Shown here in pieces: positions 1,558 to 59,656 of a stretch of 64,000 nt of DNA (position 1 is its first letter; every line of letters begins with the position of its first letter). The translations under genes were made by a program, and so were the position numbers. Source of the DNA: Macrostomum lignano (lineage: Eukaryota); contig NIVC01001776.1 of assembly GCA_002269645.1 (NCBI GenBank), forward strand, positions 62,001 through 126,000, written 5' to 3'. The notes under the pieces were generated by a model. The model did no database searches and was not told the origin of the DNA. It saw nothing but the letters and a program-made list of their open reading frames with translations.

Positions 1558-18434
<16,877 letters not shown>

Positions 18435-21099: not shown

Positions 21100-24000
21100 A
21101 TGTATAGTGAAGGAACTCCACAGCCAATGTATGAAGAGGATGTGCAGCAAAAGAAGCTAAAGTAAGTGGTTTAAAATACTTTATTATTGATGAAATTCAT
21201 AAAATAATTAAGTTATAAAATAATTATTTCAGACCAATTCTGCTGCAAAACAGGCCTCTCTATGCTAAGATGATCATGTTCCTAGTGGCTATGTTTGCAT
21301 TTGTAAGTTGAATTCAAATATTTGCATTTTCTCTATTTCTAATTACACCAAACATTGCTTCGTAATGCTCTGCAGTGCCTCGGCGGCTCCCTAGTGGCCA
21401 TCGGGGTGTACATTCAGCTGGACCGCGGCTTCATCTCCGAGATCATTGGCAGTGTGGTGGCCCTGGCCGCTGCTTACCTGTGCATTGTTGCCGGCTTTCT
21501 TATTGCTTTCGTCGGCCTGCTGGGCGCCTACGGAGCTCACAAGCTGAACAAGGCCTGTCTGATCGCCTTTCTGGTCATCATGCTGGTGCTCACCCTGGTC
21601 ACCTTTGTTGGCAGCCTGCTGGCTGTGATATTCAGGGCCACGGTGATCCAGACTGCCAAGGACACCATGAGCTACTCGCTCACCATTCACTATGGCAAGA
21701 CGCGGCTCATCACGGAATCTTGGGATGCCATCCAGGTTGGTCTAGTGATCCTTTATGCTTGAGAAGTGCTGCTTTTAACTCTGTCACACTGAGTGTCTGA
21801 TAAGTTAGATTTGAGATTCTGATCTATCAGATTGAGTCTGATCTATCAGATTTGAGATTCTGACCTATCAGATTGAGTCTGATCTATCAGATTTGAGATT
21901 CTGACCTATCAGATTTGAGATTCTGACCTATCAGATTTGAGAGTCTGACCTATCAGATTTGAGATTCTGATCTATCAGATTGAGTCTGATCTATCAGATT
22001 TGAGATTCTGATCTATCAGATTGAGTCTGATCTATCAGATTTGAGAGTCTGACCTATCAGATTTGAGATTCTGATCTATAAGATTTGAGATTCTGATCTA
22101 TCAGATTTGAGATTCTGACCTATCAGATTTGAGATTCTGATCTATAAGATTTGAGATTCTGATCTATCAGATTTGAGATTCTGGCCTATCAGATTGAGTC
22201 TGATCTATCAGATTTGAGATTCTGACCTATCAGATTTGAGAGTCTGACCTATCAGATTTGAGATTCTGATCTATCAGATTGAGTCTGATCTATCAGATTT
22301 GAGATTCTGATCTATCAGATTGAGTCTGATCTATCAGATTTGAGAGTCTGACCTATCAGATTGAGTCTGATCTATCAGATTTGAGAGTCTGACCTATCAG
22401 ATTTGAGATTCTGATCTATCAGATTGAGTCTGATCTATCAGATTTGAGATTCTGATCTATCAGATTGAGTCTGATCTATCAGATTTGAGAGTCTGACCTA
22501 TCAGATTTGAGAGTCTGACCTATCAGATTTGAGAGTCTGACCTATCAGATTTGAGAGTCTGATCTATCAGATTTGAGAGTCTGATCTATCAGATTTGAGA
22601 GTATGATCTATCAGATTTGAGAGTCTGATCTATCAGATTTGAGAGTATGATCTATCAGATTTGAGAGTCTGATCTATCAGATTTGAGAGTATGATCTATC
22701 AGATTTGAGAGTCTGATCTATCAGATTTGAGATTCTGACCTATCAGATTTGAGATTCTGATCTATCAGATTGAGTCTGATCTATCAGATTTGAGAGTCCG
22801 GTCTATCAGATTGAGTCTGATCTATCAGATTTGAGAGTCCGGTCTATCAGATTGAGTCTGACCTATCAGATTTGAGAGTATGATCTATCAGATTTGAGAT
22901 TCTGACCTATCAGATTTGAGATTCTGATCTATCAGATTGAGTCTGATCTATCAGATTTGAGAGTCCGGTCTATCAGATTGAGTCTGATCTATCAGATTTG
23001 AGAGTCCGGTCTATCAGATTGAGTCTGACCTATCAGATTTGAGAGTATGATCTATCAGATTTGAGATTCTGACCTATCAGATTTGAGATTCTGATCTATC
23101 AGATTGAGTCTGATCTATCAGATTTGAGAGTCCGGTCTATCAGATTGAGTCTGATCTATCAGATTTGAGAGTCCGGTCTATCAGATTGAGTCTGACCTAT
23201 CAGATTTGGGAGTCTGGTCTATCAGATTTCAGAGTCCGGTCTATCAGATTGAGTCTGATCTATCAGATTTGAGAGTCTGGTCTATCAGATTTGAGAGTCT
23301 GGTCTATCAGATTTGAGAGTCTGGTCTATCAGGTTTGAGAGTCTGGTCTATCAGATTTGAGAGTCTGGTCTATCAGGTTTGAGAGTCTGATCTATCAGAT
23401 TTGAGAGTCCGGTCTATCAGGTTTGAGAGTCTGATCTATCAGATTTGAGAGTCTGGTCTATCAGGTTTGAGAGTCTGGTCTATCAGATTTGAGAGTCTGA
23501 TCTATCAGATTTGAGAGTCTGGTCTATCAGATTTGAGAGTCTGGTCTATCAGGTTTGAGAGTCTGGTCTATCAGATTTGAGATTCTGATCTACCAGACTT
23601 GGAAGTCCAACCTATCACGCTCATATTATGCATTCAAAACAATCCCGAGAGTCCAGCTCAGTGGTTGAGCAATTCCCAAGTGCCCCCCCCTCGCAACCAT
23701 CGCAGACGCACCTTCGCTGCTGCGCGGTGGACAGCAACGGCTGGCAGCTGTACATCGGCAGCCAGTGGGACCTGATGGTCAACGCCGATGCGCGCAACCT
23801 CGGCTCCAGAATTCCTCAATGGTCGCCGCTGTACAAATTCGTGCCCGAGTCCTGCTGCCTCAGCCTCATCGACCCGCGCACCCTGTGGCCCAGCGGCAAA
23901 GTCAGGAACAAGGAGCAGTGCCAGTACTTCCCCTATGGCCCGCCCAACAAGCTTAGCGGAGCGTTCAACGATGCCGTTAACTATAAGGTGAGTACCCCGG

Positions 24001-27000
24001 TTTCGGAAAATCCTATATTTCTACTGACAGTAGTTTGTTTTTATTCCTGTATTTCTACTGACAGTAGTTTGTAGCAGTTTTTATTCCTGTATTTCTACTG
24101 ACAGTAGTTTGTAGCAGTTTTTATTCCTGTATTTCTACTGACAGTAGTTTGTAGCAGTTTTTATTCCTGTATTTCTACTGACAGTAGTTTGTAGCAGTTT
24201 TTATTCCTGTATTTTTACTTACAGTAGTTTTTAGCAGTTTTTATTCCTGTATTTCTACTGACAGTAGTTTGAAGCAGTTTTTATTCCTGTATTTCTACTG
24301 ACAGTAGTTTGAAGCAGTTTTTATTCCTGTATTTCTACTGACAGTAGTTTGTAGCAGTTTTTATTCCTGTATTTTTACTTACAGTAGTTTGTAGCAGTTT
24401 TTATTCCTGTATTTTTACTTACAGTAGTTTGTAGCAGTTTTTATTCCTGTATTTCTACTGACAGTAGTTTGTAGCAGTTTTTATTCCTGTATTTCTACTT
24501 ACAGTAGTTTGTAGCAGTTTTTATTCCTGTATTTTTACTTACAGTAGTTTGTAGCAGTATTTATTCCTGTATTTCTACTTACAGTAGTTTGTAGCAGTTT
24601 TTATTCCTGTATTTTTACTGTAGCAGTTTTTATTCCTGTATTTCTACTTACAGTAGTTTGTAGCAGTTTTTATTCCTGTATTTCTACTGACAGTAGTTTG
24701 TAGCAGTTTTTATTCCTGTATTTCTACTTACAGTAGTTTGTAGCAGTTTTTATTCTTTATATTTCTACTGACAGTAGTTTGTAGCAGTTTTTATTCTTTA
24801 TATTTCTACTGACAGTAGTTTGTAGGTATTTTTAATCCTATAATCCTATATTTCTACTGACAGTAGTTTGTAGCAGTTTTTATCACAACTTTCTACACCT
24901 TTTCACACACACGTGCAGGGCTGCTTCCAAGCCGGAGCGGAGGTGATGGGCTTTTACAGCAACTTCCTGGGCTACATTGGATTCTCTCTGTTCATCATTA
25001 TGGTGAGAATTTGAGCTCACAATTATTAAACATAGTTGATTACTAGCAATCTAGTGCCCCCCTTCGGGGCGGCCGATAAGAAAGAGCAAGATTTATTTAT
25101 TTAAATTCTGGTAGCGATTAGTATGGCGTCATTGGTAACAATAAGCATGGTGTCTTAAAGTATGAGTACACTTAGAAAACTTTCGTACCATTTATTTATA
25201 AAATTGGTAATCCACATTGCAGAATCGGTTTCTAAGAATCTACCAACAATACCCCAATCAGGTTTGCAATGATCCCCCAGTCAGGTTTGCAATGATCCCT
25301 CAGTCGGTTTTAAAATGATCCCCCTAGTTCAATCATAGTTTTCTCATCCTGTGCAATAATAGTCGTCTAAGCTAATGCAATAATAGTTTTCTCATCTAAT
25401 GAAATTACAGTTTTCTCGTCTCGTGCAATGATAGTTTTCTCATCTTGTGCCATAACAGTTTTCTTATCTCGTCCACCAGAGAACAAGTAGCTAGTGCAAC
25501 AATTTCCTTAGCTTTATAGAGGCTCCATTTTGTTTGGCATGACACTTCTTTTTATGTTTGAAACTGTGTCTCTTTTATGTTTGAAATGGTGACTCTTTAA
25601 TGTTTGACATGGTGGCTCTTCTATGTTTGACATGGTGGCTCTTCTATGTTTGACATGGTAGCACTTTAATGTTTGACATGGTGGCTCTTTTATGTTTGGC
25701 ATGGTAGCACTTTAATGTTTGACATGGTAGCACTTTAATGTTTGACATGGTGACTCTTCTATGTTTGACATGGCGGCCCTTTTACGTTTGAAATTGTGTC
25801 TCTGTTATGTTCGACATGGTGGCTCTTTAATATTTGACATGGATTCACGTATATGCTCGACATGGTGGCTCCCTTATGTGTGGCATGGTGTCTCTTTTAT
25901 GATTAATGTTTGACATGGAGTCGCGTATATGTTTGACATAGTGGCTCCCTTATGTGTGGCATGTTGTCTTTCTTGTATTTTTAATGTTTGACATGGAGTC
26001 ACATAGATGTTTGACATGGTGGCTCTTTTATGTTCGAAATGGTTGCTCTTTAATGTTTGACATGCAGTCACGTATATGTTTGACATAGTGGCTCCCTTAT
26101 GTGTGGCATGTTGTCTTTCTTGTATTTTTAATGTTTGACATGGAGTCACATTGATGTTTGACATGGTGGCTCTTTTATGTTCGAAATGGTTGCTCTTTAA
26201 TGTTTGACATGCAGTCACGTATATGTTTGACATAGTGGCTCCCTTATGTGTGGCATGTTGTCTTTCTTGTATTTTTAATGTTTGACATGGAGTCACATTG
26301 ATGTTTGACATGGTGGCTCTTTTATGTTCGAAATGGTTGCTCTTTAATGTTTGACATGCACTCACGTATATGTTTGACATAGTGGCTTCATTGTGTGGCA
26401 TGTTGTCTCTCTTGTATGTTTAATGTTTGACATGGAGTCACGTAGATGTTTGACATGGTGGCTCTTTTATGTTCGAAATGGTTGCTCTTTAATGTTTGAC
26501 ATGGAGTCACGTATATGTTTGACGTGTTGGCTCTTTTATTTTTGACATTGTGGCTCTTTATTGTTTGACATGGTGGCTCTTTAATGTTTGACATGCAGTC
26601 ACGTGTATGTTTGACATGGTGGCTCTTTACTGTTTGACATGGAGTCACGCATATGTCTGACTTTGTAGCTTTTTTATGTTTAACATTGTGGCTCTTTATT
26701 GTTTGACATGGCGGCTCTAAAATGTTTGACATGGAGTCACGTATATGTTTGACATGGTGGCTCTTTTATGTTCGACATAGTGGCTATTTTATGTTCGACA
26801 TGATGGCTCTTTAATGTTTGACATGGTGGCTCTTTAATGTTTGACATGGTGGCTCTTTCATGTTTGACATGGTGTTTCTTTAATGTTTGACATGGTGTCT
26901 CTTTAATGTTTGACATGGTGGCTCTTTTGTGTTTGACATGACAGCTCTTTAATGTTTGACATGTTGGCTCTTCTATGTTTGACATGGTAGCACTTTAATC

Positions 27001-30000
27001 TTCGACATGGTGGCTCTTTAATGTTTGACATGGTGGCTCTTTTATGTCTTACATGGTGGCTCCTTTATATCTTTCATGGTGGCTCTTTTATGTCTTACAT
27101 GGTGGCTTTTTTATGTTTGACATGGTGACTCTTTTATGTTTGACATGGTGCCACTTTTATGTTTGACATTGCGCTTCTTTTATGTGTAACATTTTTGGTT
27201 TTTAAGGTGTTTTAATAAAAAAATCTTTTTGCACTACTAATATTGGAACCCAGGTCGCTACATTAGCAGTCCAGTCTGTTCGCATCTAGGCTATCTCTTT
27301 TCAATTGGAGAACATGAATTGCTGTCCTTATAACTCAATTCTTACATCCCAAGACAGCAAGCATCCCCCAGATAGCAAGCATCCTCCAGATTACAAGCAA
27401 CCCCCGGATAGCAAGCATCCCCTAGATAGCAAGCATCCCCCAGATAGCAAGCATCCGCCAGATAGCAAGCATCCCCTACATAGATAGCATCCCCAAATAG
27501 CAAGCATCCACCAGACAATAAGTAGCTAGTGCGACAATTTCCTTAGCATTATAGTGGCTCCTTTAAAATTCGCTTACTTTTATGTTTGAAATTGTGTAAA
27601 TTTTATGTTTGACATGGTGCCTGTTTTATGTTCTACATGGCAACTGTTTTATGTTTGAAACGATGGCTTTTTAATGTCAGACATGGTGGCTCTTTTATGT
27701 TTTACATGGTGGCTCTTTTATGTTTGACATGGTGCCTCTTTATTGTTTGACATGGTGGCTCTTTAATGTTTAACCTGGTGGCTCTTGTTTGAAACAGTGG
27801 CTCTTTTATGTTTGACACAGTGGCTCTTTAATGTTCGACAAAGTGGCTATTTAATGTTTGACAAGGTGGCTTTTAAATGTTTGACATGGTGGCTCCTTAA
27901 TGTTCGAAATGGTGGCTCTTTAATGTTTGACATAAAGACACATATATAATTGACATGGTGGCTCTTAAATGTTTGACATGGTGGCTCTTTAATGTTCGAG
28001 AAAGTGGCTCTTTAATGTTTTTCATGGTATAGCACTTTTATGTTCGACATGGTGGCTCTTTTAGGTTTGACATGGTGGCTCTTAAATGTTTGACATGGTG
28101 GCTCTTAAATGTTTGACATGGTGGCTCTTAAATGTTTGACATGGTAGCTCTTTAATATTCTACATTGTGGCTCTTTAATGTTTAACATGGTGGCTCTTAA
28201 ATGTTTGACATGGTGGCTCTTTAATGTTTGACATGGTGGCTCTTTAATGTTTGACATAAAGTCACTTATATGTTCGAAATGGTGGCTCTTTAATATTTTA
28301 CATTGTGGCTCTTAAGTGTTCGACATGGTGGCTCTTTTAGGTTTAACATGGTGGCTCTTTTAGGTTTAACATGGTGACTCTTAAATGTTCGACATGGTGG
28401 CTCTTTAATATTCTTCATGTTATAGCTCTTTCATGTTTGACATGGTGGCTCTTTAATGTTCGACATGGTGGCTCTTTAATATTCTTCATGTTATAGCTCT
28501 TTCATGTTTGACATGGTGGCTCTTTAATGTTCGAAATGGTGGCTCTTTAATGTTCGAAATGGTGGCTCTTTAATGTTTGACACAAAGTCACATATATGTT
28601 TGACATGGTGGCTCTTTATGTTTGACATGTTGGCTCTTTTATGTTTGACATGGTGGCTCTTTTATGTTTGACATGGTGGCTCCTAAATGTTTGACATGGT
28701 GGCTCTTAAATGTTTGACATGGTGACTCTTTAATGTTTCAAATGGTGGCTCTTAAATGTTTGACATGGTGGCTCTTTAATGTTTTACATGGTGGCTCCTA
28801 AATGTTTGACATGGTGGCTCTTTATGTTTGACATGTTGGCTCTTTTATGTTTGACATGGTGGCTCTTTATGTTTGACATGTTGGCTCTTTTATGTTTGAC
28901 ATGTTGGCTCTTTTATGTTTGACATGGTGGCTTTTTTATGTTTGACATGGTGGCTCCTAAATGTTTGACATGGTGGCTCTTAAATTTTTGACATGGTGAC
29001 TCTTTAATGTTTCAAATGGTGGCTCTTAAATGTTTGACATGGTGGCTCTTTAATGTTTTACATGGTGGCTCCTAAATGTTTGACATGGTGGCTCTTAAAT
29101 GTTTGACATGGTGACTCTTTAATGTTTCAAATGGTGGCTCTTAAATGTTTGACATGGTGGCTCTTTAATGTTTTACATGGTGGCTCCTAAATGTTTGACA
29201 TGGTGGCTCTTTATGTTTGACATGTTGGCTCTTTTATGTTTGACATGGTGGCTCTTTATGTTTGACATGTTGGCTCTTTTATGTTTGACATGTTGGCTCT
29301 TTTATGTTTGACATGGTGGCTCTTTTATGTTTGACATGGTGGCTCCTAAATGTTTGACATGGTGGCTCTTAAATTTTTGACATGGTGACTCTTTAATGTT
29401 TCAAATGGTGGCTCTTAAATGTTTGACATGGTGGCTCTTTAATGTTTTACATGGTGGCCCTTAATGTTTGACATGGTGGCTCTTTATGTTTGACATGTTG
29501 GCTCTTTTATGTTTGACATGGTGGCTCTTTAATGTTTTACATGGTGGCTCTTAAATGTTTGACATGGTGGCTCTTTATGTTTGACATGTTGGCTCTTTTA
29601 TGTTTGACATGGTGGCTCTTTAATGTTTTACATGGTGGCTCTTAAATGTTTGACATGGTGGCTCTTTATGTTTGACATGTTGGCTCTTTTATGTTCGACA
29701 TGGTGGCTCTTTAATGTTCGACATGGTGGCTCTTAAATGTTTGACATGGTGGCTCTTTATGTTTGACATGTTGGCTCTTTTATGTTCGACATGGTGGCTC
29801 TTTAATGTTCGACATGGTGGCTCTTCTATGTTTCACATTGCGCTTCTTTTATGTTTAGTAGTTTTGTGTTTTTTAGGTGTTTTAATAAAAAAAATCTTTT
29901 TTGCACTACTAAGATTCGAACCCAGGTCGCTACAGTAGCAGTCCAGTCTGTTCGCATCTTGGCTATCTCTTTTCAATTGGAGAACATGAATTGTGGCCCT

Positions 30001-31748
30001 TATAATTCAATTCTTACAGCAAGTCAATTGGAGTAAAAAATTATGACATAATCAATTTCTCAGTCAGCCAGAATCAGTCTCAATTTAAGTTGGCAATATG
30101 GTTACGCAATTTCATTCAAGTTTTGTGTGCATTTGTTCGGCACTGTTTTCAACTTGTTGTGATGCAATCTTTATCACAATCGGAATTCAGTCAGTCAGTT
30201 TTTTCTCTAGCATTTTTACAGTGCGTTTCAAGTCGAAATAGCTGCTTGACCTTTGCAAAAAAGCATGTTTTTCGAATATTTAATCCCTTTAGCATCGAGC
30301 AATTTCTTAGCCACGATGCATGTACCGTCACGGAAAAATTTCTGATCGAATGGTGCAAGTTCGAAGAAAATCGGTTCAGGCATTCAGGCTGTGGACTGGA
30401 ATTCCGGTCAGACAGACAGACAGACAGATCTTAGAGATTTAGTATATTGTGAGATGAGATGAGATGAGATGAGAATGAATGATTAGTTATTTTATATTAA
30501 TTCGATATTATCTATTCAAGAGTTAAGATTTTTTAAAGTTCCATGCGTCAATTTTTTGCATTGAAACTTTACTCACAACATTGCTGATTCACATATTATG
30601 ATTTATAGCCTCTGTAGTGCCAGACTATATGTTCACACATTTATTAGCTCACAGACCTAGCGTTCACATATTTTCCATTCACAGATTCTTTATTCACCAA
30701 ATGAGCATTCACTGAATCCGGATTCACATATTTCTCATTCACAGACGTCTGACTCACAGATTCTGCATTCACCGATTACACATTCACAGATTCTGATTTA
30801 CAGGTTTCACAGTCACGAACTCCACATTTACATATTCCGCCGTTCACAGATCCTGTATTCACTGATTACACATTCACAGATTCTGATTTAACGTTTTAGC
30901 AACCACAGGTTCTGTGTATTAACAGATATCACATTCACAGACCCGCTCTGTAGTCCCAGCGTCCTTATTCACATGTGCCGCACTTACAGATTCCATATTC
31001 ATAGATTTCTATTTCGTGAATGAAGCTTCCTTCTCCTCAAAGAAGTTTAAAATTTGAAATTTCAGCAGCTTCACTAAAAACACTGGAATTGTCTGATGAG
31101 AATATCAAATGGTGAAAATAAGCCTTTGACATTTCCCCATGCCCTCCAGATAATTGGCATCATCAGCAGTTTGGCCCTGATCGTCACTATTAACAAGGAC
31201 ATGAAGATGGTACGTAAGCAGGCGGGCAAGGACTATCGGATGCCCGGAGGCGGCGGCTATTGAGCTCGAATGATAGACCTTTGTTTTTCCTGACAAAATA
31301 ATTACCTTCTTTGTGCGTGCGCTCCTGTCAGTCCTATTATTACTAATATTGCTTAAATTAAAATAATTGCAGACCTGTAAAACTTTGACCTTAATGTCTT
31401 ATTTAAGCTTGTTTTACCGTTAGCAGTGAGATGGTGCATCTAATCGAGTGTGTTTGACTTAAGCTGCTTACACTGTATGTGGAATTTAAGCATAGGATTA
31501 TTTGTTTGAATGCAAAATTAGACTTAAATTAGATTAATAGTCTATGGCCACAAGACTGTATATTGATTTTCCTGCGCAAAGCCAGCGGGCACGAGACCAC
31601 CAACTTCACGCCCGCCCAGACTGTTGTCTATGGCAAATCCTCACTGGGTGCTGCGCGAACAGAAACTATGCTTGGCCATAGACAGTTAGGGACCCTCAGG
31701 TTTCTCCAGCACCCCCTCTGTTTCAGCAGTGTAATTGAAATCAAGTAG
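21100..31748 (+). CDS. Tetraspanin, copy 1
   Basis: Exons 21100-21161, 21233-21302, 21376-21735, 23706-23987, 24919-25002, 31150-31213, 31582-31748 (or read-through to TGA at 31263). Four TM helices; large loop has CCA (for CCG), PESCC, C and GC; GT-AG ends and phases are consistent. Confidence 0.9.
21805..23600 (+). repeat. 19/22-bp self-complementary minisatellite in tetraspanin intron 3 (duplicate ~50863-52755)
   Basis: TATCAGATTTGAGAGTCTGATC and TATCAGATTGAGTCTGATC variants. Confidence 0.96.
24012..24885 (+). repeat. 40-bp minisatellite in tetraspanin intron 4 (~21 units; ~4 units at 53167-53326)
   Basis: TATTTCTACTGACAGTAGTTTGTAGCAGTTTTTATTCCTG with internal palindrome CTACTG-A-CAGTAG. 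Confidence 0.95.
25520..27180 (+). repeat. 22/23-bp satellite, block 1 (inside the Helitron-like element)
   Basis: ATGTTTGACATGGTGGCTCTTTA with diverged higher-order variants. Confidence 0.93.
27345..27515 (+). repeat. 18-bp minisatellite
   Basis: GCATCCCCCAGATAGCAA. Confidence 0.9.
27590..29840 (+). repeat. 22/23-bp satellite, block 2 (inside the Helitron-like element)
   Basis: Same monomer as block 1, more homogeneous. Confidence 0.95.
29903..29968 (-). pseudogene. Degenerate tRNA-like sequence inside the Helitron-like element (second copy 27231-27296)
   Basis: Minus strand AGATAGCCAAGATG...TGGACTGCTA...CTGGGTTCGAATC followed by a T-run. GGACTGCTAAT in the 27231 copy resembles a tRNA-Ser(GCT) anticodon arm; the acceptor stem does not pair. 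Confidence 0.45.
30575..31010 (+). repeat. Degenerate ATTCACA(GA) repeat region (duplicate ~53570-54090)
   Basis: ATTCACAGA/ATTCACAT motifs recur at roughly 20-bp spacing. Confidence 0.7.
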
Positions 31749-33837
31749 TGAGGTTGTGAAATCAAATGGAAGATCATGTTTCATAACAAATTTTTGTATT
31801 TGTCGATGCAATGCTGATTCACGATCGTGTCTAATGCCATAAGTCCCAAGGGGTTGAAGAGAAATAGCCATACCTGATAATTGACCTATAGAGGCTTTAG
31901 TGCTGATTTCTTCTATCTGAGTGTAATTTACGAGTAATTCTGCCCAATGCGAAACATTCCAATGTTTTTTAATGTGTGTTTTTCATTCCTAAGCTCGTTT
32001 CCCGTGTATATAATGGTACGTCTAAAAAAAGTAAAATTTTCTGCTTATAATCATCCGTTGTAGCCTGCAAACAACACGACCAACTGCAAGCAGTGTTTTT
32101 GTCTACCCATTAATACTATTTGCTCGGTTCTAGCATATAGCAAATACATTTTACCAAGGCTGGAATGAAAGCTTCTTGTAATACGCTTCATTAGCATGAT
32201 TCTTGCTATTATACCTACATTTTTAGTCATCAAGTATTTACTCTCTTTTTTCAAAAAGAAGATACGAAATAGTTCGTTTAGGATTGCAGATTATTTTTTA
32301 TCGTTTGAAGCAAGGAATTCATTTCTAGCTTAGTGTATGGGTACTCGAACTTATTTATATGGCACATATGGAATATAATTTTTAGTATAGAGGACTAGCA
32401 TTTTGCACCCTCGTGTGGGGCGCGAGCGGGGACACAGGCTCACACGAACGATGCTGGCGAGCCAAGCGTTGTACGAGCTATTGTTTTACTGCTTGATGGC
32501 TCAGCCTATTGCATTATGCTAATGACAATGCCTTGTGTTGGCTAATAAACTTGATACTAGCTAATTGCCCTTCATAGTTTATACGATTTCAACAAATTGC
32601 GACAAAGGCCATGCCGCCGGACCTAATCCGGCGTTCGCCAGCAGGCAGTCGACGAAACGCCGAGTGCCCGATTGTCTCCGGCGGTAGGGCGCCTGCAGTG
32701 TCAGCAGCAGCGCCTCTTGCACCTGGTACGGAGTACGGACAGTAGGGACTCGGCGCGGTAAAATGATAAAATGACATCACAGCTTAGGATGAGCACTAGC
32801 TTTGCCAGAGCCCCTCTAAGCCAGGTTGCCTTGAGAGTGCGACCCTAAGTGTGTTCTTTGGTACGGCTGGGGCTGGACCGCTCGATGTTCCCCTCACGGT
32901 CCCTGGCGCCACCCAGAAGATCCGCATGGGCCGGCGCAGCAGCGGCTCGGCGGGCAGCACCACATCTCCGACCGCGCCCATTTCTCTCACGCCAGCGCTC
33001 AATACGTTCGCTGCCGCTTGGTCTTGCCTCTGCTGGACGCCGCAGCAGTGAAACGCGGCTCATTCCTGGATTCCGTTTAGGCGTCCATAGAAATTGGTTT
33101 ACAGTCTCCAGCACATCTTGACCAGCAATTAAAGCATTCCAGGAAAGCTCTTTCGTCTCTGCATCTATCGAATTTGGGCTATTCAGCTCACCGAATTCGT
33201 CGTCTGACATGAACGCCTCTTTGTCATTGGACGCCATTATCCCAGAAATTACTTGTTGCTTTTACTATAAGATACTTAAGAATGATTTAACTCAGTCGTA
33301 ACTCGTAAAAATACAGTATATCTATATATGTTAGTGTTCTTAGGCTATGCATTTTCATCCGACTGGAATAGTGATAGACATGGAAAGTCGTCACTCCTAA
33401 GAAAATAGTCTATGGTATGAGCGTTAAGCTTTTAAACTTAAACTTACCATCCGACCGAAAAGGAGATGAACGGTTCATTTGGCTCAGTTAGAAAGAGATT
33501 ATTTTGCAGGCTCTTCGAAAATCACGCCAATTTTTATACAGTTCATTTGAAGCATTATTACGACTTTTTATTAAAAATGTGCTATGCATCATCAACTGGA
33601 ATTATTTGAGCGTTGAATGATACTTTTATTTGGCAATATTATCGAGAAGTTTCAAAAAAACAAATTGATGAAAAAATTAGCAGTTCACATTACAATAATG
33701 TAAAATCGTACAAAAAAGTATTATATTAAATGAATTAAAATTTTAATCATTAAATGAGCACCGATCTTTTCATCATGAACAATTGTTAAAAAATTAATGA
33801 ATGACGTGGCCATGGAGTGCATGTACGGCAGCTATCT

Positions 33838-36536
33838 TTAAATAGACCTGGGTGCCACCAGCTTGCAAATACCAACTGTGGACAGTAACGCCATAATTAC
33901 CAGAGCAAAGACCAACACGGCTGTCTGAGTTCCGAAATCCAGTCTTCCTTCAGCATCCTCGATGTCTTTCTTATCTTTCCTCTGCTCGGCAGAGAGTGTG
34001 ACAGGTACAGAAACTGTGGTAGAGGTGCTCTCTGATTGTTGTGACGCTGATGAAGCCTCTGTAGTTGTAGTTGGTGTAGTTGTGGTTGTAGTTGATGTAC
34101 TTGTTGAAGTTGTTGTGGTCATCGGCGTAGTTGTCGTCGTGCTTGTTGACGTGGTTGTCGTGGTTGTTGACGTGGTCGTCGTGGTTGTTGGCATGGTAGT
34201 CGTGGTTGTTGGTGTAGTCGTCGTCGTTGTAGTCGTTGAAGTAGCTGACGGAGTCGTTGATGATGGTGCAGATGTCGAAGCAGCAGTGGTTTCTACCGCT
34301 GTTGGAGGTTGAGTAGGCGGTGGAGTGCTGGAGAGTTCACTTTCAAAGCTGCAGTTTGCATAGAGGTTGATTTTTTTACTACTGTTTTCACCGCTCTGAA
34401 TCTCGATAAGCATGAAGCTCCCAGTCGAGGGGTTTAAAAGCTGGCAAACAACTGGCCAGTAAGAGGTACTAACTGATTGGAACACCTGGACCAGTCGGTC
34501 GGCATTGTCCCCAGTTGAAATTCCGTTCACTAGAACGTTGCCCCATTGCAGCACCATGTTGCTGGCGTCCCCGAGTATCCGAAAGGACACGCTGGCAGCC
34601 GACGGCTCGACCAGGCTAGTGGTGTCTCGGTTGGTCCACATCAGCTCTGAATCGGACGAGTTCAAAGCCAGAATGCACCAGGCCAGCTTTGCAGCAGATT
34701 CCTCTGCTGTGGCATTGGCTGCCGGGCACGGGTTGAACCGCAATGCGGTTCTGTTGACCAAGTTCACAGTGACAGTCGGGTTGGCGGAGTCCGCGCAAAC
34801 CTCCGTCCAATTCGCGTCGCCCTGGAGGAAAACTTTTAAAAAGGCGTCTCCCAGTGCCAGGCTGGAACTGCTGTCGCAGGGTGCCACGTAAAGGTCAAGG
34901 GTAGCTCTGACTACGGTAGGTGTAGTGGCGCCGGAGTCCAACCCGATCACGATTTCGTCGACCGCATTCACGAGGACAGCCCCGTCAGCTTTGGATGCGT
35001 TGCAGAAGTTAAGGCCCCCAAACGTCTGCTCAGTCAGAAGTCGCTGCAGTGTGGGGCCCCAGTAGCCACCGGAGGAGCTTTGGACGGCCGGGACTGGGAG
35101 AGTTTCGTTGGAACTGTTGGCTGGAGCACCCAGCACCAGGGTAGGCTGTACGAGACTCCCACAGTCCATATGCATATCCACGGTTTCATTGTTGTCAGAG
35201 ATTGTCACTAGCAAGTCCTCCGTAGCATTGAGAACACTGCAGATAAGCAGCCACCATCTTTGCCCCGGAGCCGTTGAAATGGACGTCAAAACCGCCTGTA
35301 CGCGTTGATTTGGCGACATGGAATCTTCGAGCAGGCCAGAGTTCACTTGAACGCGATACCAAGTGGCATTCGACAGTGAATCCGTGCTGCTACTGAGCAT
35401 TACAGATGCTGTGGTGTTGCTGTCTCTGGGCTCTGGTAGAGTTCGATTGACCCACACGGGGTCCCAGTTGGCTGTGTAGGTCACCAGCACCCACGCGGTC
35501 ACCTGCTGCTCAGTGATTCCAGAATGCTGTACTTCATAGTTGCAGGGCTGCAAAGTGTTCTGTAACTCTGGTCTAACTGACGACTGCAGGTAAATAGCCA
35601 GGTTGATCGTGTTGTCGCAGATGTCTCGCCATTGAATCACAGTCGGCATTTTCGCTACTAAAAAATTTCGAGTGGCTTCTGAACCATCACTGCAGAAGAT
35701 GACGTATAGTTTAATGCTTGACTTCACCGAGTAGACTAAACCTGGCGTGTTCGCGTCCGTGATGTTGTAAGCATCTACCGCCTCTAACACAACGCTCTTC
35801 GATGGAGGCGCGTTGCACAGCCGAAAACGAGTGGCCAACTCCGAGCTGAAGGCCTGCGTCCAAACCAGGGCCTGGGACGGCTGCTGATGCAACGCGCAGA
35901 TGGTCAGCAGGGCCAGAAGCGGCGCAGCTGTGGCAGCGGCGTTGGCTGCAATGAGTTAAAATATCAGAAACTTCTCAAACCCAATTTGCATGTCCGTTAG
36001 TCTTTTAATTACCCTAAATCTTTGTCTCAGTCTATATCCTAGAGTAGCACCAAAACGAATCTACGTATCGAATCTACGCACTCCTTCAGAGTCACAACGC
36101 CAAATCAATGTACTTTTAATGGCCTGAGAATCTCTTCAGTTTAAATTGGTTTTGAGTGTAAAGAAATGACACAGGTGAACGAAAATTCCCAGCCATCTAA
36201 ACGTAAATCGAGAGTCTTGCAGTTCAAACGAAATGTTCTAGAATGCCGCTTCATTAGAAAACGTTTCAAGCAGCTACTGCAGTACTTTCCGGCGATTTTT
36301 TGCTATCTAATTGGCCGCTAATGATTTCAAGCGAAAAAATACTTTGAAGCAGGTTCTCTGTCTCGGTAACTTGAAGCAAAGTTCATTAGTTATTTTTTTG
36401 CTGAGATTCTGCCGCAGGAAACGTGCCACTGCTTGATTTGATTTTAGTTCAAGTGACTCGGTTGCAGCTAGTTATGTTACACAGATGCAAACTGTGAAAA
36501 TTAAGCCATAAATTATTATCTATGACACTTACGCAT
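33838..36536 (-). CDS. Orphan type-I membrane glycoprotein, 703 aa: signal peptide, two ~219-aa Cys domains, Thr-rich mucin stalk, TM, very short tail; copy 1
   Basis: join(36536-36533 ATGC|GTAAGT, 35945-33838 after ctcattgcag|CC) gives MPNAAATAAPLLALLTICALHQQPSQA-LVW... Many N-x-S/T sequons; poly-Thr stalk at ~34030-34330; TM TAVLVFALVIMALLSTVGIC. Confidence 0.85.
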
Positions 36537-37042
36537 GGCTGCTGAGTCTCACCGGGGCGAATACCTTATAGCAGTGGCTGCAAGACGCTTCTAGTCAGCT
36601 CAGAGTTGAGGCCCGTCATTGATGGACCGAGCCAGAGCTCTCACTGCGTGAGCTTTTTATTCCGGCCTTCTGCGCGCACAAGTGTTGAGCTGGGGTTGTC
36701 ATTCTTCGGGTGCAATTGGAATTCGCGTGGACAGACGCACGCAGGGGTCACCTGAGCATTCGTGGTTAAGTGTTTGCCATGGGTGGCTAAGGGTAGGTTA
36801 GTCCCTGTCTTTTATTGTCTCAGAAACACACAGAGCCCATCTCCATCTTCTGAGCTATACGCTACTCAAATACTTGAACGCCCTCGCACAACAGCAGATT
36901 GAAGACAACTGCCGCTTGTTTTTGCCTCTCTGCGTCGACTTTTTGCCGGCCTCTCTCTACCCTAGCCGAGACAGAAGATGATAGTTAAAGCAATGGAAGG
37001 GGCTTAGGCAGAAATACAACCGAAGATGCCGCTGAACTCCCT

Positions 37043-37480
37043 CCACACAGCTATCCATCCATACAGCTATCCATCCACATAGCTATCCATCCATATAGCT
37101 ATCCATCCATATAGCAATCCATCCACACAGCTATCCATCCATATAGCAATCCATCCACACAGCTATCCATCCATATAGCTATCCATCCACATAGCTATCC
37201 ATCCACATAGCTATCCATCCACACAGCTATCCATCCACATAGCTATCCATCCACACAGCTATACATCCATACAGCTATCCATCCACATAGCTATCCATCC
37301 ATATAGCTATCCATCCACATAGCTATCCATCCACATAGCTATCCATCCACACAGCTATCCATCCATACAGCTATCCATCCACATAGCTATCCATCCACAC
37401 AGCTATCCATCCAGATAGCTATCCATCCACACAGCTATCCATCCACACAGCTATCCATCCACACAGCTATCCATCCACAT
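37043..37480 (+). repeat. 16-bp minisatellite (duplicate ~60163-60583, one unit shorter)
   Basis: AGCTATCCATCCACAT; offset changes from 23120 to 23104. Confidence 0.95.
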
Positions 37481-45000: not shown

Positions 45001-45355
45001 GAAGCTCGCCGTCTGGGGCTGGGATCGGGCCAAGGAGATCTTGGAACGAGTATTCTGGCGCAGGATTATCTGGCAAACTTGCGTGTCGCCTTTTACTATT
45101 CGACTTGTCGTATTCAATGTGCTGTTTGGTCAAAACTGTGCTTCTAGTTTAGATTTGGTATTGTGTTATAGATGAGCGTAAAATGTTTAATAATTTCCCT
45201 TGAAACTGACTGACTGACTGACTGACTGACTGACTGACTGACTGGCTGACTGACTGACTGACTGACTGGCTGACTGACTGACTGACTGACTGACTGACTG
45301 ACTAACTGACTGGCTGACTGACTGACTGACTGACTGACTGACTGACTGACTGACT

Positions 45356-45416
<61 letters not shown>

Positions 45417-45809
45417 GCTGGCTGACTGGCTGAGTCTGATTGGCTGACTGACTGACTGACTGACTGACTGACTGACTGACTGACTGACTGGCTGACTGAC
45501 TGACTGACTGACTGACTGACTGACTGACTGACTGACTGACTGACTGACTGACTGGCTGACTCACTGGCTGACTGACTGACTGACTGACTGACTGACTGAC
45601 TGACTGACTGTCTGACTGACTGACTGACTGACTGACTGACTGGCTGACTGACTGACTGACTGACTGACTGACTGACTGACTGACTGACTGACTGACTGGC
45701 TGACTGACTGACTGACTGACTGACTGACTGACTGACTGACTGACTGACTGACTGACTGACTGACTGACTGGCTGACTCACTGGCTGACTGACTGACTGAC
45801 TGACTGACT

Positions 45810-45846
<37 letters not shown>

Positions 45847-45889
45847 GCTGACTGGCTGAGTCTGATTGGCTGACTGACTGACTGACTGG

Positions 45890-45922
<33 letters not shown>

Positions 45923-47182: not shown

Positions 47183-47482
47183 CTTAGGCATGCTGGAGTC
47201 CAGCTGACGCTGCAGCTGGTCCCTCTCCCGCTGCAGGTCCTCCGCGCGCCGGTGCGACAGACCCAGCTGCTCCTGCGCGTCTCGAAGCGCCTCCGTCAGC
47301 CTGTCGCGCTCATCTAACATGCTGATCATCAGCTGCTCGACGTTGCCAGCTGCCGATAGCTCCTCCTGGGAGAAGTCGCGCTCTCCGCTGCCACCGCCGC
47401 CGCCTTCGCCGTTGCCACCGTCTCCTCCACCAGTAGGCCCGACAATGCCATCCTCAACTATGGTGGGCATCACATCGCACAT
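47183..47482 (-). pseudogene. Orphan duplicate of liprin-alpha exon 1
   Basis: Identical to 18135-18434 except one synonymous change (GCA>GCG at 47288). The following intron copy ends at the GATA tract 41866-42059 and no exon 2 follows. Confidence 0.8.
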
Positions 47483-56957: not shown

Positions 56958-59656
56958 TTAAATAGACCTGGGTGCCACCAGCTTGCAAATACCAACTGTG
57001 GACAGTAACGCCATAATTACCAGAGCAAAGACCAACACGGCTGTCTGAGTTCCGAAATCCAGTCTTCCTTCAGCATCCTCGATGTCTTTCTTATCTTTCC
57101 TCTGCTCGGCAGAGAGTGTGACAGGTACAGAAACTGTGGTAGAGGTGCTCTCTGATTGTTGTGACGCTGATGAAGCCTCTGTAGTTGTAGTTGGTGTAGT
57201 TGTGGTTGTAGTTGATGTACTTGTTGAAGTTGTTGTGGTCATCGGCGTAGTTGTCGTCGTGCTTGTTGACGTGGTTGTCGTGGTTGTTGACGTGGTCGTC
57301 GTGGTTGTTGGCATGGTAGTCGTGGTTGTTGGTGTAGTCGTCGTCGTTGTAGTCGTTGAAGTAGCTGACGGAGTCGTTGATGATGGTGCAGATGTCGAAG
57401 CAGCAGTGGTTTCTACCGCTGTTGGAGGTTGAGTAGGCGGTGGAGTGCTGGAGAGTTCACTTTCAAAGCTGCAGTTTGCATAGAGGTTGATTTTTTTACT
57501 ACTGTTTTCACCGCTCTGAATCTCGATAAGCATGAAGCTCCCAGTCGAGGGGTTTAAAAGCTGGCAAACAACTGGCCAGTAAGAGGTACTAACTGATTGG
57601 AACACCTGGACCAGTCGGTCGGCATTGTCCCCAGTTGAAATTCCGTTCACTAGAACGTTGCCCCATTGCAGCACCATGTTGCTGGCGTCCCCGAGTATCC
57701 GAAAGGACACGCTGGCAGCCGACGGCTCGACCAGGCTAGTGGTGTCTCGGTTGGTCCACATCAGCTCTGAATCGGACGAGTTCAAAGCCAGAATGCACCA
57801 GGCCAGCTTTGCAGCAGATTCCTCTGCTGTGGCATTGGCTGCCGGGCACGGGTTGAACCGCAATGCGGTTCTGTTGACCAAGTTCACAGTGACAGTCGGG
57901 TTGGCGGAGTCCGCGCAAACCTCCGTCCAATTCGCGTCGCCCTGGAGGAAAACTTTTAAAAAGGCGTCTCCCAGTGCCAGGCTGGAACTGCTGTCGCAGG
58001 GTGCCACGTAAAGGTCAAGGGTAGCTCTGACTACGGTAGGTGTAGTGGCGCCGGAGTCCAACCCGATCACGATTTCGTCGACCGCATTCACGAGGACAGC
58101 CCCGTCAGCTTTGGATGCGTTGCAGAAGTTAAGGCCCCCAAACGTCTGCTCAGTCAGAAGTCGCTGCAGTGTGGGGCCCCAGTAGCCACCGGAGGAGCTT
58201 TGGACGGCCGGGACTGGGAGAGTTTCGTTGGAACTGTTGGCTGGAGCACCCAGCACCAGGGTAGGCTGTACGAGACTCCCACAGTCCATATGCATATCCA
58301 CGGTTTCATTGTTGTCAGAGATTGTCACTAGCAAGTCCTCCGTAGCATTGAGAACACTGCAGATAAGCAGCCACCATCTTTGCCCCGGAGCCGTTGAAAT
58401 GGACGTCAAAACCGCCTGTACGCGTTGATTTGGCGACATGGAATCTTCGAGCAGGCCAGAGTTCACTTGAACGCGATACCAAGTGGCATTCGACAGTGAA
58501 TCCGTGCTGCTACTGAGCATTACAGATGCTGTGGTGTTGCTGTCTCTGGGCTCTGGTAGAGTTCGATTGACCCACACGGGGTCCCAGTTGGCTGTGTAGG
58601 TCACCAGCACCCACGCGGTCACCTGCTGCTCAGTGATTCCAGAATGCTGTACTTCATAGTTGCAGGGCTGCAAAGTGTTCTGTAACTCTGGTCTAACTGA
58701 CGACTGCAGGTAAATAGCCAGGTTGATCGTGTTGTCGCAGATGTCTCGCCATTGAATCACAGTCGGCATTTTCGCTACTAAAAAATTTCGAGTGGCTTCT
58801 GAACCATCACTGCAGAAGATGACGTATAGTTTAATGCTTGACTTCACCGAGTAGACTAAACCTGGCGTGTTCGCGTCCGTGATGTTGTAAGCATCTACCG
58901 CCTCTAACACAACGCTCTTCGATGGAGGCGCGTTGCACAGCCGAAAACGAGTGGCCAACTCCGAGCTGAAGGCCTGCGTCCAAACCAGGGCCTGGGACGG
59001 CTGCTGATGCAACGCGCAGATGGTCAGCAGGGCCAGAAGCGGCGCAGCTGTGGCAGCGGCGTTGGCTGCAATGAGTTAAAATATCAGAAACTTCTCAAAC
59101 CCAATTTGCATGTCCGTTAGTCTTTTAATTACCCTAAATCTTTGTCTCAGTCTATATCCTAGAGTAGCACCAAAACGAATCTACGTATCGAATCTACGCA
59201 CTCCTTCAGAGTCACAACGCCAAATCAATGTACTTTTAATGGCCTGAGAATCTCTTCAGTTTAAATTGGTTTTGAGTGTAAAGAAATGACACAGGTGAAC
59301 GAAAATTCCCAGCCATCTAAACGTAAATCGAGAGTCTTGCAGTTCAAACGAAATGTTCTAGAATGCCGCTTCATTAGAAAACGTTTCAAGCAGCTACTGC
59401 AGTACTTTCCGGCGATTTTTTGCTATCTAATTGGCCGCTAATGATTTCAAGCGAAAAAATACTTTGAAGCAGGTTCTCTGTCTCGGTAACTTGAAGCAAA
59501 GTTCATTAGTTATTTTTTTGCTGAGATTCTGCCGCAGGAAACGTGCCACTGCTTGATTTGATTTTAGTTCAAGTGACTCGGTTGCAGCTAGTTATGTTAC
59601 ACAGATGCAAACTGTGAAAATTAAGCCATAAATTATTATCTATGACACTTACGCAT
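56958..59656 (-). CDS. Orphan mucin-stalk type-I membrane protein, copy 2
   Basis: join(59656-59653, 59065-56958); the ORF-track translation is identical to copy 1. Confidence 0.85.

What the first reader, a model, noticed from the sequence alone, without database searches (positions are those of the whole stretch)
33838..36536. Orphan surface protein built from an unrecognised, internally duplicated ~219-aa six-cysteine domain on a mucin stalk
Seen: repeat 1 (Cys 35817 to Cys 35161, 219 aa) and repeat 2 (Cys 35004 to Cys 34351, 218 aa) align motif by motif: RLCNA..VVLEAVD / NFCNA..VLVNAVD; KLYVIFC / DLYVAPC; WRDIC / WTEVC; LQPC / FNPC; TAW / LAW; WVNR / WTNR; WYRVQVN / WGNVLVN; RVQAVLTSIST..WWLLICSVLN / RLVQVFQSVST.YWPVVCQLLN; MHMDC / LYANC. 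Six Cys and several Trp are conserved, and repeat 2 has one extra Cys. The protein also has a signal peptide, many N-glycan sequons, a Thr-rich stalk, one TM and an almost absent tail; the first exon contributes only ATGC. I recognise no known family. Inference: a new extracellular beta-rich domain displayed above the glycocalyx (adhesion, lectin or receptor role). Its position beside a tetraspanin, a class of protein that organises short-tailed membrane proteins, is suggestive but unproven.
Basis: partly seen in the sequence, partly recalled or inferred. Interest (0 to 1): 0.75.

Follow-up and report, generated by a model that had tools for sequence, protein, structure and literature searches.

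The report
Flatworm-only stalked surface glycoprotein gene
This is a real gene of the flatworm Macrostomum lignano for a membrane protein that holds two copies of an unrecognised cysteine-containing module on a sugar-coated stalk. It has no detectable relatives anywhere else, which is common in this animal, and nothing yet shows what it does.

Summary
The minus strand carries a two-exon gene: exon 1 is ATGC (36536-36533), the intron is a canonical GT-AG, and exon 2 is 35945-33838. It encodes a 703-aa protein: signal peptide, two paralogous ~245-aa modules (26% identical; six Cys and four Trp invariant; shuffle z = 13.9), a Thr-rich stalk, one TM helix and an 8-aa tail.

GenBank holds the same gene model, PAA65546.1 from Macrostomum lignano, as a hypothetical protein.

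No described domain matched. Pfam, PDB sequences, an exhaustive phmmer against 1.84 billion representative proteins, a profile search and a metagenome scan all gave nothing credible. Two AlphaFold runs failed (pLDDT 36 and 31), so the fold, and the claim that it is beta-rich, stay open.

- The gene occurs twice in this window, inside a ~23-29 kb tandem segmental duplication, with a 4824-bp tract that is identical between the copies.
- Two further copies sit on other contigs. One has a frameshift and has lost a conserved Cys.
- Copies differ with dN/dS of about 0.86.

The tetraspanin lies tail-to-tail 2.57 kb away in all four loci, but these are young duplicates, so the linkage says nothing about function. 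About 35-45% of M. lignano genes are Macrostomum-specific. I read this as an ordinary lineage-restricted surface glycoprotein of modest interest.

The parts
36565..36570 (-). TATA-like element (TATAAG), 29-34 nt upstream of the ATG. It implies a very short 5' leader.
   Evidence: Read directly; conserved in L001. Its function is inferred.
36533..36536 (-). Exon 1 coding part: ATGC (Met plus the first base of the Pro codon).
   Evidence: It is required to give MPNAAATAAP as in PAA65546.1.
35946..36532 (-). Intron, 587 nt, GTAAGT...TTGCAG.
   Evidence: It is 2.56% diverged from the L001 copy, against 1.04% for exon 2.
33838..35945 (-). Exon 2, 2108 nt including the stop codon; encodes residues 2-703.
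35869..35943 (-). Signal peptide (residues 1-27 together with exon 1). The predicted cleavage is after SQA, by the -3/-1 rule.
   Evidence: Sequence. The cleavage site is inferred; no predictor was run.
35140..35868 (-). Module 1 (residues 28-270), with Cys45, 86, 111, 136, 237 and 263.
35065..35139 (-). Inter-module linker (residues 271-295), rich in Pro, Ser and Asn, with two sequons.
34330..35064 (-). Module 2 (residues 296-540), with Cys316, 358, 385, 408, 502 and 533 plus the unpaired extra Cys425.
33985..34329 (-). Thr/Ser/Pro-rich mucin-like stalk (residues 541-655). It includes a 21-nt (7-aa) tandem repeat at 34133-34230.
33937..33984 (-). Charged juxtamembrane segment QRKDKKDIEDAEGRLD (residues 656-671).
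33865..33936 (-). Transmembrane helix (residues 672-695), ending in Cys695 at the cytosolic face.
   Evidence: Kyte-Doolittle hydrophobicity scan.
33838..33864 (-). 8-aa cytoplasmic tail KLVAPRSI plus the stop codon.
33625..33630 (-). AATAAA polyadenylation signal, 208 nt after the stop.
   Evidence: Whether it is used is inferred.
56958..59656 (-). Second, identical copy of the whole gene (exon 2 at 56958-59065, exon 1 at 59653-59656).
32254..37077 (.). 4824-bp tract that is 100% identical to 55374-60197, embedded in duplicates that differ by about 1-2% on both sides.
21100..31263 (+). Neighbouring tetraspanin gene, convergent, with its stop 2.57 kb from this gene's stop. Its introns are swollen by tandem repeats. 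Copy B ends at about 54368.
   Evidence: Pfam PF00335, E = 7.9e-11; mapping of the annotated L001 gene onto the window.

Best explanation
This is a transcribed, lineage-restricted Macrostomum lignano gene encoding a type I membrane glycoprotein.

Shown from sequence: after signal-peptide removal, the mature protein carries two tandem paralogous ~245-aa modules. Each has six conserved cysteines, and the region is heavily N-glycosylated. Below them are a ~115-residue Thr/Ser/Pro stalk, one TM helix and an 8-residue tail.

Inferred:
- The six cysteines of each module form three intramodule disulfides.
- The stalk is O-glycosylated and extended, roughly 25-30 nm at about 0.25 nm per residue (textbook mucin behaviour). 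It would hold the modules above the glycocalyx.
- The tail is too short to signal, so the protein acts either as a passive recognition or adhesion surface, or through a lateral membrane partner.
- Juxtamembrane Cys695 is a plausible palmitoylation site.

The gene family is young and unstable. It has been copied by segmental duplication and polyploidy, homogenised by gene conversion, is weakly constrained, and one copy looks broken.
For: - The gene model is independently present in GenBank (PAA65546.1). That annotation is built from RNA-seq transcripts (PMC5730564).
- P0003 lacks 12 nt (QFFG) that the L001 genome encodes. That fits a transcript-derived model rather than an ab initio one.
- A 684-codon open frame with canonical splice sites, TATA element and AATAAA is present.
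- The internal duplication has z = 13.9, with invariant Cys and Trp.
- Sequons are enriched (p = 0.003).
- Stalk composition and the 7-aa tandem repeat.
- A single TM and an 8-aa tail.
- Exon 2 is less diverged from L001 than the intron (1.04% against 2.56%), so there is some constraint.
- No homologue was found in 1.84e9 representative proteins or in the 5.8e9 clusters.
- Copies and mosaics are documented.
Against: - No expression or localisation data could be found. No paper or held supplement mentions Mlig003108 or PAA65546.
- dN/dS between the window copy and L001 is about 0.86, from 16.5 non-synonymous against 6.5 synonymous changes. That is compatible with near-neutral drift.
- The L002 copy has a frameshift and a Cys136-to-Arg change.
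- The structure could not be predicted, so 'globular disulfide-bonded module' is inferred only from the conserved Cys/Trp pattern.
- The signal peptide lacks a basic n-region.
- No signal-peptide, GPI or O-glycosylation predictor was available.
Confidence: 0.6

Rival explanations
1. The modules are strongly diverged members of a known extracellular fold, for example a pair of Ig/FN3-like beta-sandwiches or a lectin-like jelly roll. Sequence methods cannot see this because no intermediate sequences are available. On this reading the protein is an ordinary adhesion-type receptor rather than a new domain.
For: - UniRef names the cluster 'Fibronectin type-III domain-containing protein', presumably from an automatic profile rule.
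- Most lineage-restricted genes turn out to be diverged rather than new (general knowledge).
- The alignment depth is only two diverged sequences, so AlphaFold's failure says nothing about fold novelty.
- There is a weak local resemblance of WTEVCAD / WRDICDN to the SRCR 'WGxVCDD' motif (SRCR_2, E = 0.42).
Against: - Pfam fn3 and every other Pfam model fail even at E <= 10.
- The PDB sequence and profile searches give only a designed armadillo protein.
- The two halves of a module are not similar to each other, which argues against two equal sandwich domains.
- Six Cys spaced 41-25-25-101-26 do not fit the Ig, FN3, SRCR, CTLD or ZP patterns (my knowledge of those families).
Confidence: 0.25
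2. It is a rapidly evolving reproductive recognition protein, on the sperm or egg surface or in the genital tract, under diversifying selection.
For: - It is restricted to the lineage.
- dN/dS is about 0.86 overall.
- 8 of 15 replacements plus both indels fall in residues 41-126, against one synonymous change there.
- 48.5-54% of germline-enriched M. lignano genes are Macrostomum-specific (PMC5816591).
Against: - Mlig003108 is absent from the held supplementary germline and neoblast lists of PMC5816591 and from the supplements of PMC7336406. This is weak evidence, because held files may be cut.
- The substitution cluster could equally be a gene-conversion tract. L002 is a mosaic of the two types.
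- The counts are too small for a significant test.
Confidence: 0.15
3. It is a young, redundant, decaying gene family with little or no function. The open frame persists only because the copies are recent and keep being homogenised.
For: - dN/dS is about 0.86.
- L002 has a frameshift plus loss of a conserved Cys.
- There is a 4.8-kb identical tract between the tandem copies.
- There are no homologues elsewhere.
Against: - The two modules are only 26% identical yet keep six Cys and four Trp aligned. That requires long-term purifying selection since the internal duplication.
- Exon divergence is 0.4 times intron divergence.
- Sequon enrichment.
- The L002 frameshift may be a single-base assembly error. 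I recall Mlig_3_7 as a long-read assembly but did not check this here.
Confidence: 0.1
4. The C-terminal hydrophobic segment is a GPI-attachment signal, or the ectodomain is shed at the basic juxtamembrane stretch. Either way the mature protein is not a transmembrane protein.
For: The C-terminal hydrophobic run is preceded by a small-residue or charged spacer (AEGRLDFGTQT) and followed by only 8 residues. RKDKK lies 20 residues above the membrane.
Against: GPI signals normally end in the hydrophobic run, whereas here a Lys/Arg-containing tail follows it (my knowledge). No predictor was available.
Confidence: 0.07
5. It is an envelope-type glycoprotein gene of an endogenous virus or mobile element.
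For: The general outline (signal peptide, glycosylated Cys-containing ectodomain, TM, short tail) also fits viral glycoproteins.
Against: - No gag, pol or integrase ORFs or matches around it. The neighbours are a class-A GPCR exon, a tetraspanin and a liprin-like gene.
- It has a spliced 5' end and its own TATA element.
- The same flanking genes are present in all loci.
- There are no Pfam hits.
Confidence: 0.02

Closest known systems
Stalked type I adhesion or recognition glycoproteins (MAdCAM-1, CD8alpha, GPIb-alpha, membrane fractalkine, PSGL-1 / CD43-type sialomucins)
   Same: Signal peptide, N-terminal globular recognition module(s), a membrane-proximal Ser/Thr/Pro mucin stalk with short tandem repeats, and a single TM. 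It most likely works like these, by displaying a binding surface above the glycocalyx.
   Different: The globular modules match none of the Ig, LRR, chemokine or other domains of those proteins. The tail is 8 aa, shorter than in most of them. No SEA or EGF modules are present. There is no sequence homology.
Apicomplexan 6-Cys (s48/45) surface proteins
   Same: Tandem paralogous modules defined by six conserved cysteines. They are lineage-restricted, sit on the cell surface, have no signalling tail and depend on partners.
   Different: The s48/45 module is about 120 aa, whereas here it is about 220-245 aa with a different Cys spacing. Pfam PF07422 does not match. The phylum is different and there is no mucin stalk. 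This is an analogy only.
Short-tailed tetraspanin partner proteins (EWI-2 / CD9P-1; schistosome Sm29 with TSP-2)
   Same: A single-pass glycoprotein with a very short tail and a juxtamembrane Cys, encoded next to a tetraspanin.
   Different: It has no Ig or Ly6 domains. The only link to a tetraspanin is genomic adjacency within one set of recent duplicates. No interaction data exist.
Fibronectin type III proteins (the name UniRef gives A0A267EVR8)
   Same: An extracellular, modular protein.
   Different: The Pfam fn3 models do not match at E <= 10. FN3 domains are about 90-100 aa and normally lack conserved disulfides. The name probably comes from an automatic rule and could not be reproduced here.

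Membership tests
Fibronectin type III (UniRef name) | Match to the FN3 profile (Pfam PF00041 and relatives); a ~90-100-aa seven-strand sandwich. | tested here: not met
   hmmscan of the whole protein and of each repeat at E <= 10 gave no fn3-family hit. The PROSITE profile could not be run.
Fibronectin type III (UniRef name) | Beta-sandwich fold. | tested here: inconclusive
   The AlphaFold models have pLDDT 36 and 31.5. Foldseek's best hit has E = 1.5 and TM <= 0.16.
Membrane-tethered mucin-like glycoproteins | A Pro/Thr/Ser-rich tandem-repeat region next to a TM anchor. | tested here: met
   72% Ser/Thr and 11% Pro over about 110 aa; 21-nt repeat with 4.5 copies; TM at residues 672-695.
Membrane-tethered mucin-like glycoproteins | SEA or EGF-like modules, as in canonical transmembrane mucins (MUC1 / MUC4 type). 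| tested here: not met
   No Pfam SEA, EGF, NIDO, AMOP or VWD hit.
Membrane-tethered mucin-like glycoproteins | Actual dense O-glycosylation of the stalk. | not testable with these tools
   Needs glycoproteomics, or lectin or mobility-shift assays.
Zona pellucida domain proteins | A ~260-aa ZP module with 8-10 conserved Cys, a furin site and a TM directly after it. | tested here: not met
   No PF00100 hit. There are six Cys per module, and a mucin stalk separates the modules from the TM.
6-Cys s48/45 | A ~120-aa module matching PF07422. | tested here: not met
   No hit. The module is about twice that length.
SRCR | A ~100-110-aa module with 6-8 Cys that reaches the Pfam gathering score. | tested here: not met
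   Only a 25-residue SRCR_2 fragment matches, E = 0.42, 11.7 bits against a cut-off of 27.
Tetraspanin-web partner protein | Physical association with a tetraspanin. | not testable with these tools
   Only genomic adjacency is shown.
Taxonomically restricted (Macrostomum-specific) gene | No detectable homologue outside the lineage. | tested here: met
   - Exhaustive phmmer against 1.84e9 representatives returned only itself and a spurious tandem-repeat ORF.
- The word-indexed search of 5.8e9 clusters returned only itself.
- The profile search, PDB and JGI metagenomes were negative.
Taxonomically restricted (Macrostomum-specific) gene | Presence or absence in congeners (M. cliftonense, M. hystrix, M. 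janickei). | not testable with these tools
   The assemblies GCA_950096795 and GCA_950097015 exist, but their annotation is only on Zenodo (PMC10468722). No tool here can tblastn them.

The most novel reading that the evidence does not exclude
The ~220-245-aa six-cysteine module is the founding example of a genuinely new extracellular fold, confined to macrostomid flatworms. The protein would act as a cell-surface recognition molecule working through the adjacent tetraspanin, or as a fast-evolving gamete or mating-tract recognition factor. Its hypervariable segment at residues 78-126 would be the binding loop.
Probability: 0.1. Interest if true: 0.55.

Novelty: new variant of a known kind. Interest (0 to 1): 0.3.

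Why it matters
If the module is a real new fold, it would add one more lineage-specific extracellular domain. It would also give M. lignano, the only flatworm with stable transgenesis (PMC8717057 abstract), a tractable surface marker or recognition molecule.

The locus also shows concerted evolution in a neopolyploid: tandem and homeologous copies, a 4.8-kb perfectly homogenised tract, a mosaic copy and a possibly dying copy.

However, 35-45% of M. lignano genes are already classed as Macrostomum-specific (PMC5816591), so an orphan membrane glycoprotein is not surprising on its own. Without expression or binding data it does not open a long-standing question.

Tried and rejected
- Pfam hmmscan of the whole protein and each repeat at E <= 10 gave only noise: DDHD and SOG2 on the Thr-rich stalk, and SRCR_2 at E = 0.42.
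- phmmer and a profile hmmsearch against PDB sequences gave only a designed armadillo protein and an aminotransferase, at E = 0.006-0.7.
- The word-indexed search of 5.8e9 clusters returned only the protein itself.
- The profile version of that search returned nothing, not even the protein itself. I treat that as uninformative rather than negative.
- The exhaustive phmmer against 1.84e9 representatives gave one extra hit, P0004 (E = 5.8e-6). I rejected it. It is a 5x tandem 72-aa repeat whose single best stretch scores only 32.7 bits, so the E-value comes from summing repeats. Its 'LQSSALPTELSR' motif is, from memory, typical of ORFs called across tRNA genes. No tRNA lies in the gene.
- The JGI metagenome scan found 52 pattern matches, none confirmed by tblastn.
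- AlphaFold2 on module 1 and on module 2, each with the four-row repeat alignment, gave pLDDT 36.0 and 31.5. I did not run the second model or the viral library.
- Literature: full-text searches for Mlig003108, PAA65546 and A0A267EVR8 found no paper. Of seven M. lignano papers tried, five had supplements held as text and none mentioned the gene. Two had no supplements held.
- The bacterial promoter and terminator scan is irrelevant for a eukaryote and was ignored.
- I considered and rejected a viral envelope or transposon origin, and trans-splicing as the source of the ATG. From memory, the M. lignano spliced leader ends in ATG. Joined to the exon 2 acceptor it would read ATG CCA ACG... and hit a stop after 14 codons, whereas the GenBank protein needs the extra C of exon 1.
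Full report
**What is in the sequence.** On the minus strand, a TATAAG box (36570-36565) is followed 29 nt later by ATGC (36536-33). Then come a GTAAGT donor, a 587-nt intron and a TTGCAG acceptor. Exon 2 (35945-33838) is open to a TAA stop. An in-frame TAA lies five codons upstream of the acceptor. The hydrophobic N-terminus (AAATAAPLLALLTICAL) therefore has no start codon of its own and needs the upstream ATG. The spliced CDS encodes 703 aa. AATAAA lies 208 nt after the stop.

**Organism and independent gene model.** The exact-cluster look-up shows this is Macrostomum lignano. The 90% cluster contains three proteins:
- PAA65546.1, 'hypothetical protein BOX15_Mlig003108g1', 704 aa.
- A 445-aa fragment, P0002.
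- The window's own product, P0001.

The Mlig_3_7 annotation that produced PAA65546.1 is built from RNA-seq transcripts (StringTie/TACO/TBONE plus a de novo assembly; PMC5730564). P0003 also lacks 12 nt (QFFG) that its own contig encodes. That is what one expects from a mapped transcript, not from an ab initio predictor. I take this as indirect evidence of transcription. I could find no direct expression data.

**Architecture.**
- Residues 1-27 are a signal peptide, with SQA|L at the predicted cleavage site.
- Residues 28-270 and 296-540 are the two modules, joined by a Pro/Ser/Asn linker.
- Residues 541-655 are the stalk: 72% Ser/Thr and 11% Pro, with a 21-nt (7-aa) tandem repeat of 4.5 copies at 34133-34230.
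- A charged segment, QRKDKKDIEDAEGRLD, follows.
- The only strong hydrophobic stretch besides the N-terminus is 672-695, followed by the tail KLVAPRSI.
- Fifteen N-X-S/T sequons lie in the ectodomain, against 7.2 +/- 2.4 in composition-preserving shuffles (p = 0.003).

Module 2 has the extra Cys425.

**The internal duplication is real.**
- BLASTP of module 1 against module 2 gives E = 3e-8 (22% identity over 236 aa).
- The Smith-Waterman score is 118, against 36.3 +/- 5.9 for 2000 shuffles (z = 13.9, none reach it).
- MAFFT puts the identity at 26%. It aligns six Cys (45/316, 86/358, 111/385, 136/408, 237/502, 263/533) and four Trp (107, 166, 197, 233 in module 1) as invariant.
- The halves of one module do not resemble each other, so the unit is one ~220-245-aa module and not two equal sub-domains.

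Keeping this skeleton at 26% identity implies long purifying selection after the internal duplication.

**Is it a known domain?** Nothing says so.
- Pfam at E <= 10 gives only noise.
- PDB sequences give nothing, by phmmer or by profile.
- The word-indexed search of 5.8e9 clusters finds only the protein itself.
- The exhaustive phmmer over 1.84e9 representatives finds itself plus P0004. P0004 is a 5x tandem 72-aa repeat whose E-value comes from adding up a 32.7-bit chance stretch five times. I reject it.
- A profile of the four repeat sequences found nothing in the big database. It did not even return the protein itself, so I do not count that search.
- The same alignment found nothing in JGI metagenomes.
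- UniRef's name 'Fibronectin type-III domain-containing protein' could not be reproduced with Pfam fn3.

AlphaFold2 on either module, with the only alignment available (two diverged plus two near-identical rows), gave pLDDT 36.0 and 31.5. So 'no described family by sequence' stands. 'New fold' and 'beta-rich' are untested. The low-confidence models draw a mix of hairpins and helices.

- The window contains a tandem segmental duplication. Roughly 13.2-40.8 kb recurs at 41.9-64.0 kb, with an offset of 28.5 kb at the left and 23.1 kb at the right because intronic tandem arrays differ in length.
- It carries the 5' part of a liprin-like gene, the tetraspanin, a small ORF, this gene and the last exon of a class-A GPCR.
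- The second gene copy is at 56958-59656.
- The two copies are identical over 4824 bp (32254-37077 = 55374-60197). The duplicated flanks differ about every 50-100 bp on both sides. At about 1.2% divergence, zero differences in 4.8 kb is not chance. It is either recent gene conversion or assembly collapse.

In the Mlig_3_7 assembly there are two more loci:
- L001 (NIVC01001640.1, the source of P0003) differs from the window copy by 15 replacements, 6 synonymous changes and two in-frame indels.
- L002 (NIVC01001641.1) is a mosaic. It is L001-type at most diagnostic sites in residues 41-126 and window-type at the diagnostic sites elsewhere (residue 78 and all from 191 onward). It has a frameshift near residue 211 and Cys136-to-Arg. 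It is either a dying copy or contains an assembly indel error.

**Constraint.**
- Window against L001: pN = 0.0105 and pS = 0.0122, so dN/dS is about 0.86 on very few changes.
- Exon 2 divergence (1.04%) is 0.4 times intron divergence (2.56%).
- Eight of the 15 replacements and both indels lie in residues 41-126, mostly between Cys86 and Cys111, with one synonymous change there.
- That pattern could be a fast-evolving loop or a conversion tract. The data cannot separate these.

**Neighbourhood.**
- The tetraspanin (Pfam E = 7.9e-11) is convergent. Its stop maps to about 31263, 2.57 kb from this gene's stop.
- The same spacing holds in copy B, L001 and L002.
- These four loci are 0-2.6% diverged duplicates, so they amount to one observation.
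- Upstream on the same strand, 38862-39176 is the last exon of a rhodopsin-type GPCR ([15 protein letters not shown]).
- No transposon or viral genes are nearby.

**Most likely mechanism.**
- Shown: it is a secretory-pathway type I protein with two paralogous Cys-conserving modules, dense sequons, a mucin-type stalk, one TM and an 8-aa tail.
- Inferred: three disulfides per module, and an extended O-glycosylated stalk of about 25-30 nm that lifts the modules above the glycocalyx.
- Inferred: with no signalling tail, it acts as a passive recognition or adhesion surface, or through a lateral partner. Cys695 at the cytosolic end of the TM is a candidate palmitoylation site.
- In what it works like, the closest things are stalked adhesion glycoproteins (MAdCAM-1, CD8alpha, GPIb-alpha, fractalkine) and, by analogy only, the apicomplexan 6-Cys proteins. 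It is a member of none of them.

**Context for scoring.** Grudniewska et al. classed 35% (ORF clusters) to 44.5% (all transcripts) of M. lignano genes as Macrostomum-specific (PMC5816591). Congeneric genomes exist, but their annotations are not in sequence databases (PMC10468722). 'No homologue' here therefore means 'none outside the genus as sampled'. The finding is a correct and careful piece of reading, and the gene is real. It is one of thousands of lineage-restricted genes in this species. Its function is unknown and its fold is unresolved.

**Verdict.**
- Observation: confirmed.
- Interpretation: partly supported.
- Novelty: a new variant of a known kind, that is, a stalked type I surface glycoprotein with an unclassified module.
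- Interest: 0.3.

Noticed in passing
window 13165-40826 and 41866-64000: There is a large tandem segmental duplication with units of about 23-29 kb. It carries the 5' exons of a liprin-like gene, a tetraspanin, a small ORF, the stalked glycoprotein gene and a GPCR exon. Identity is 92-99.5%. The length differences come from intronic minisatellite arrays.
   Followed up: partly
window 32254-37077 = 55374-60197: This 4824-bp tract is perfectly identical between the two duplicate units, while both flanks differ by about 1-2%. That means recent gene conversion or assembly collapse. It covers the whole gene plus the small downstream ORF.
   Followed up: partly
L002 9268-11338 (NIVC01001641.1): A third copy of the gene is a mosaic of the two sequence types. 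It has a frameshift in module 1 and a Cys136-to-Arg change. GenBank annotates only its C-terminal 445 aa (P0002). It is either a pseudogene or contains an assembly indel error.
   Followed up: partly
window 32845-33237 (-), also 55965-56357: An unannotated 130-aa ORF (MASNDKEAFMSDDEFGELNSPNSIDAETKELSWNALIAGQDVLETVNQFLWTPKRNPG...) lies between this gene and the tetraspanin. It has no Pfam hit. It may be the first exon of a small gene.
   Followed up: no
window 38862-39176 (-), also about 61966-62280: This is the last exon of a rhodopsin-class GPCR ([26 protein letters not shown], NPxxY motif). It lies 2.3 kb upstream of the gene on the same strand.
   Followed up: no
window 1558-18461 (-): A liprin-like gene with long coiled-coil exons and SAM domains (Pfam SAM_1, E = 6.5e-21). 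Its 5' exons (15548-15907, 18087-18461) are duplicated at 44075-44434 and 47135-47509.
   Followed up: no
window 880-1490, 4731-5659, 6203-6768, 8678-9544, 10203-11136, 13866-15473, 21790-23601, 27577-29856, 45205-46099: There are many long minisatellite or tandem-repeat arrays with periods of roughly 20-85 bp. They produce long spurious repeat ORFs such as (SVSQ)n, (LSIY)n and (TDSTS)n. They inflate the introns of the tetraspanin and liprin-like genes, and array lengths differ between the duplicate units.
   Followed up: no
L001 about 10710-10721, compared with P0003: The GenBank protein PAA65546.1 lacks four residues (QFFG) that its own contig encodes in frame. This suggests the CDS was derived from a transcript of another copy and mapped with a 12-nt gap.
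   Followed up: partly
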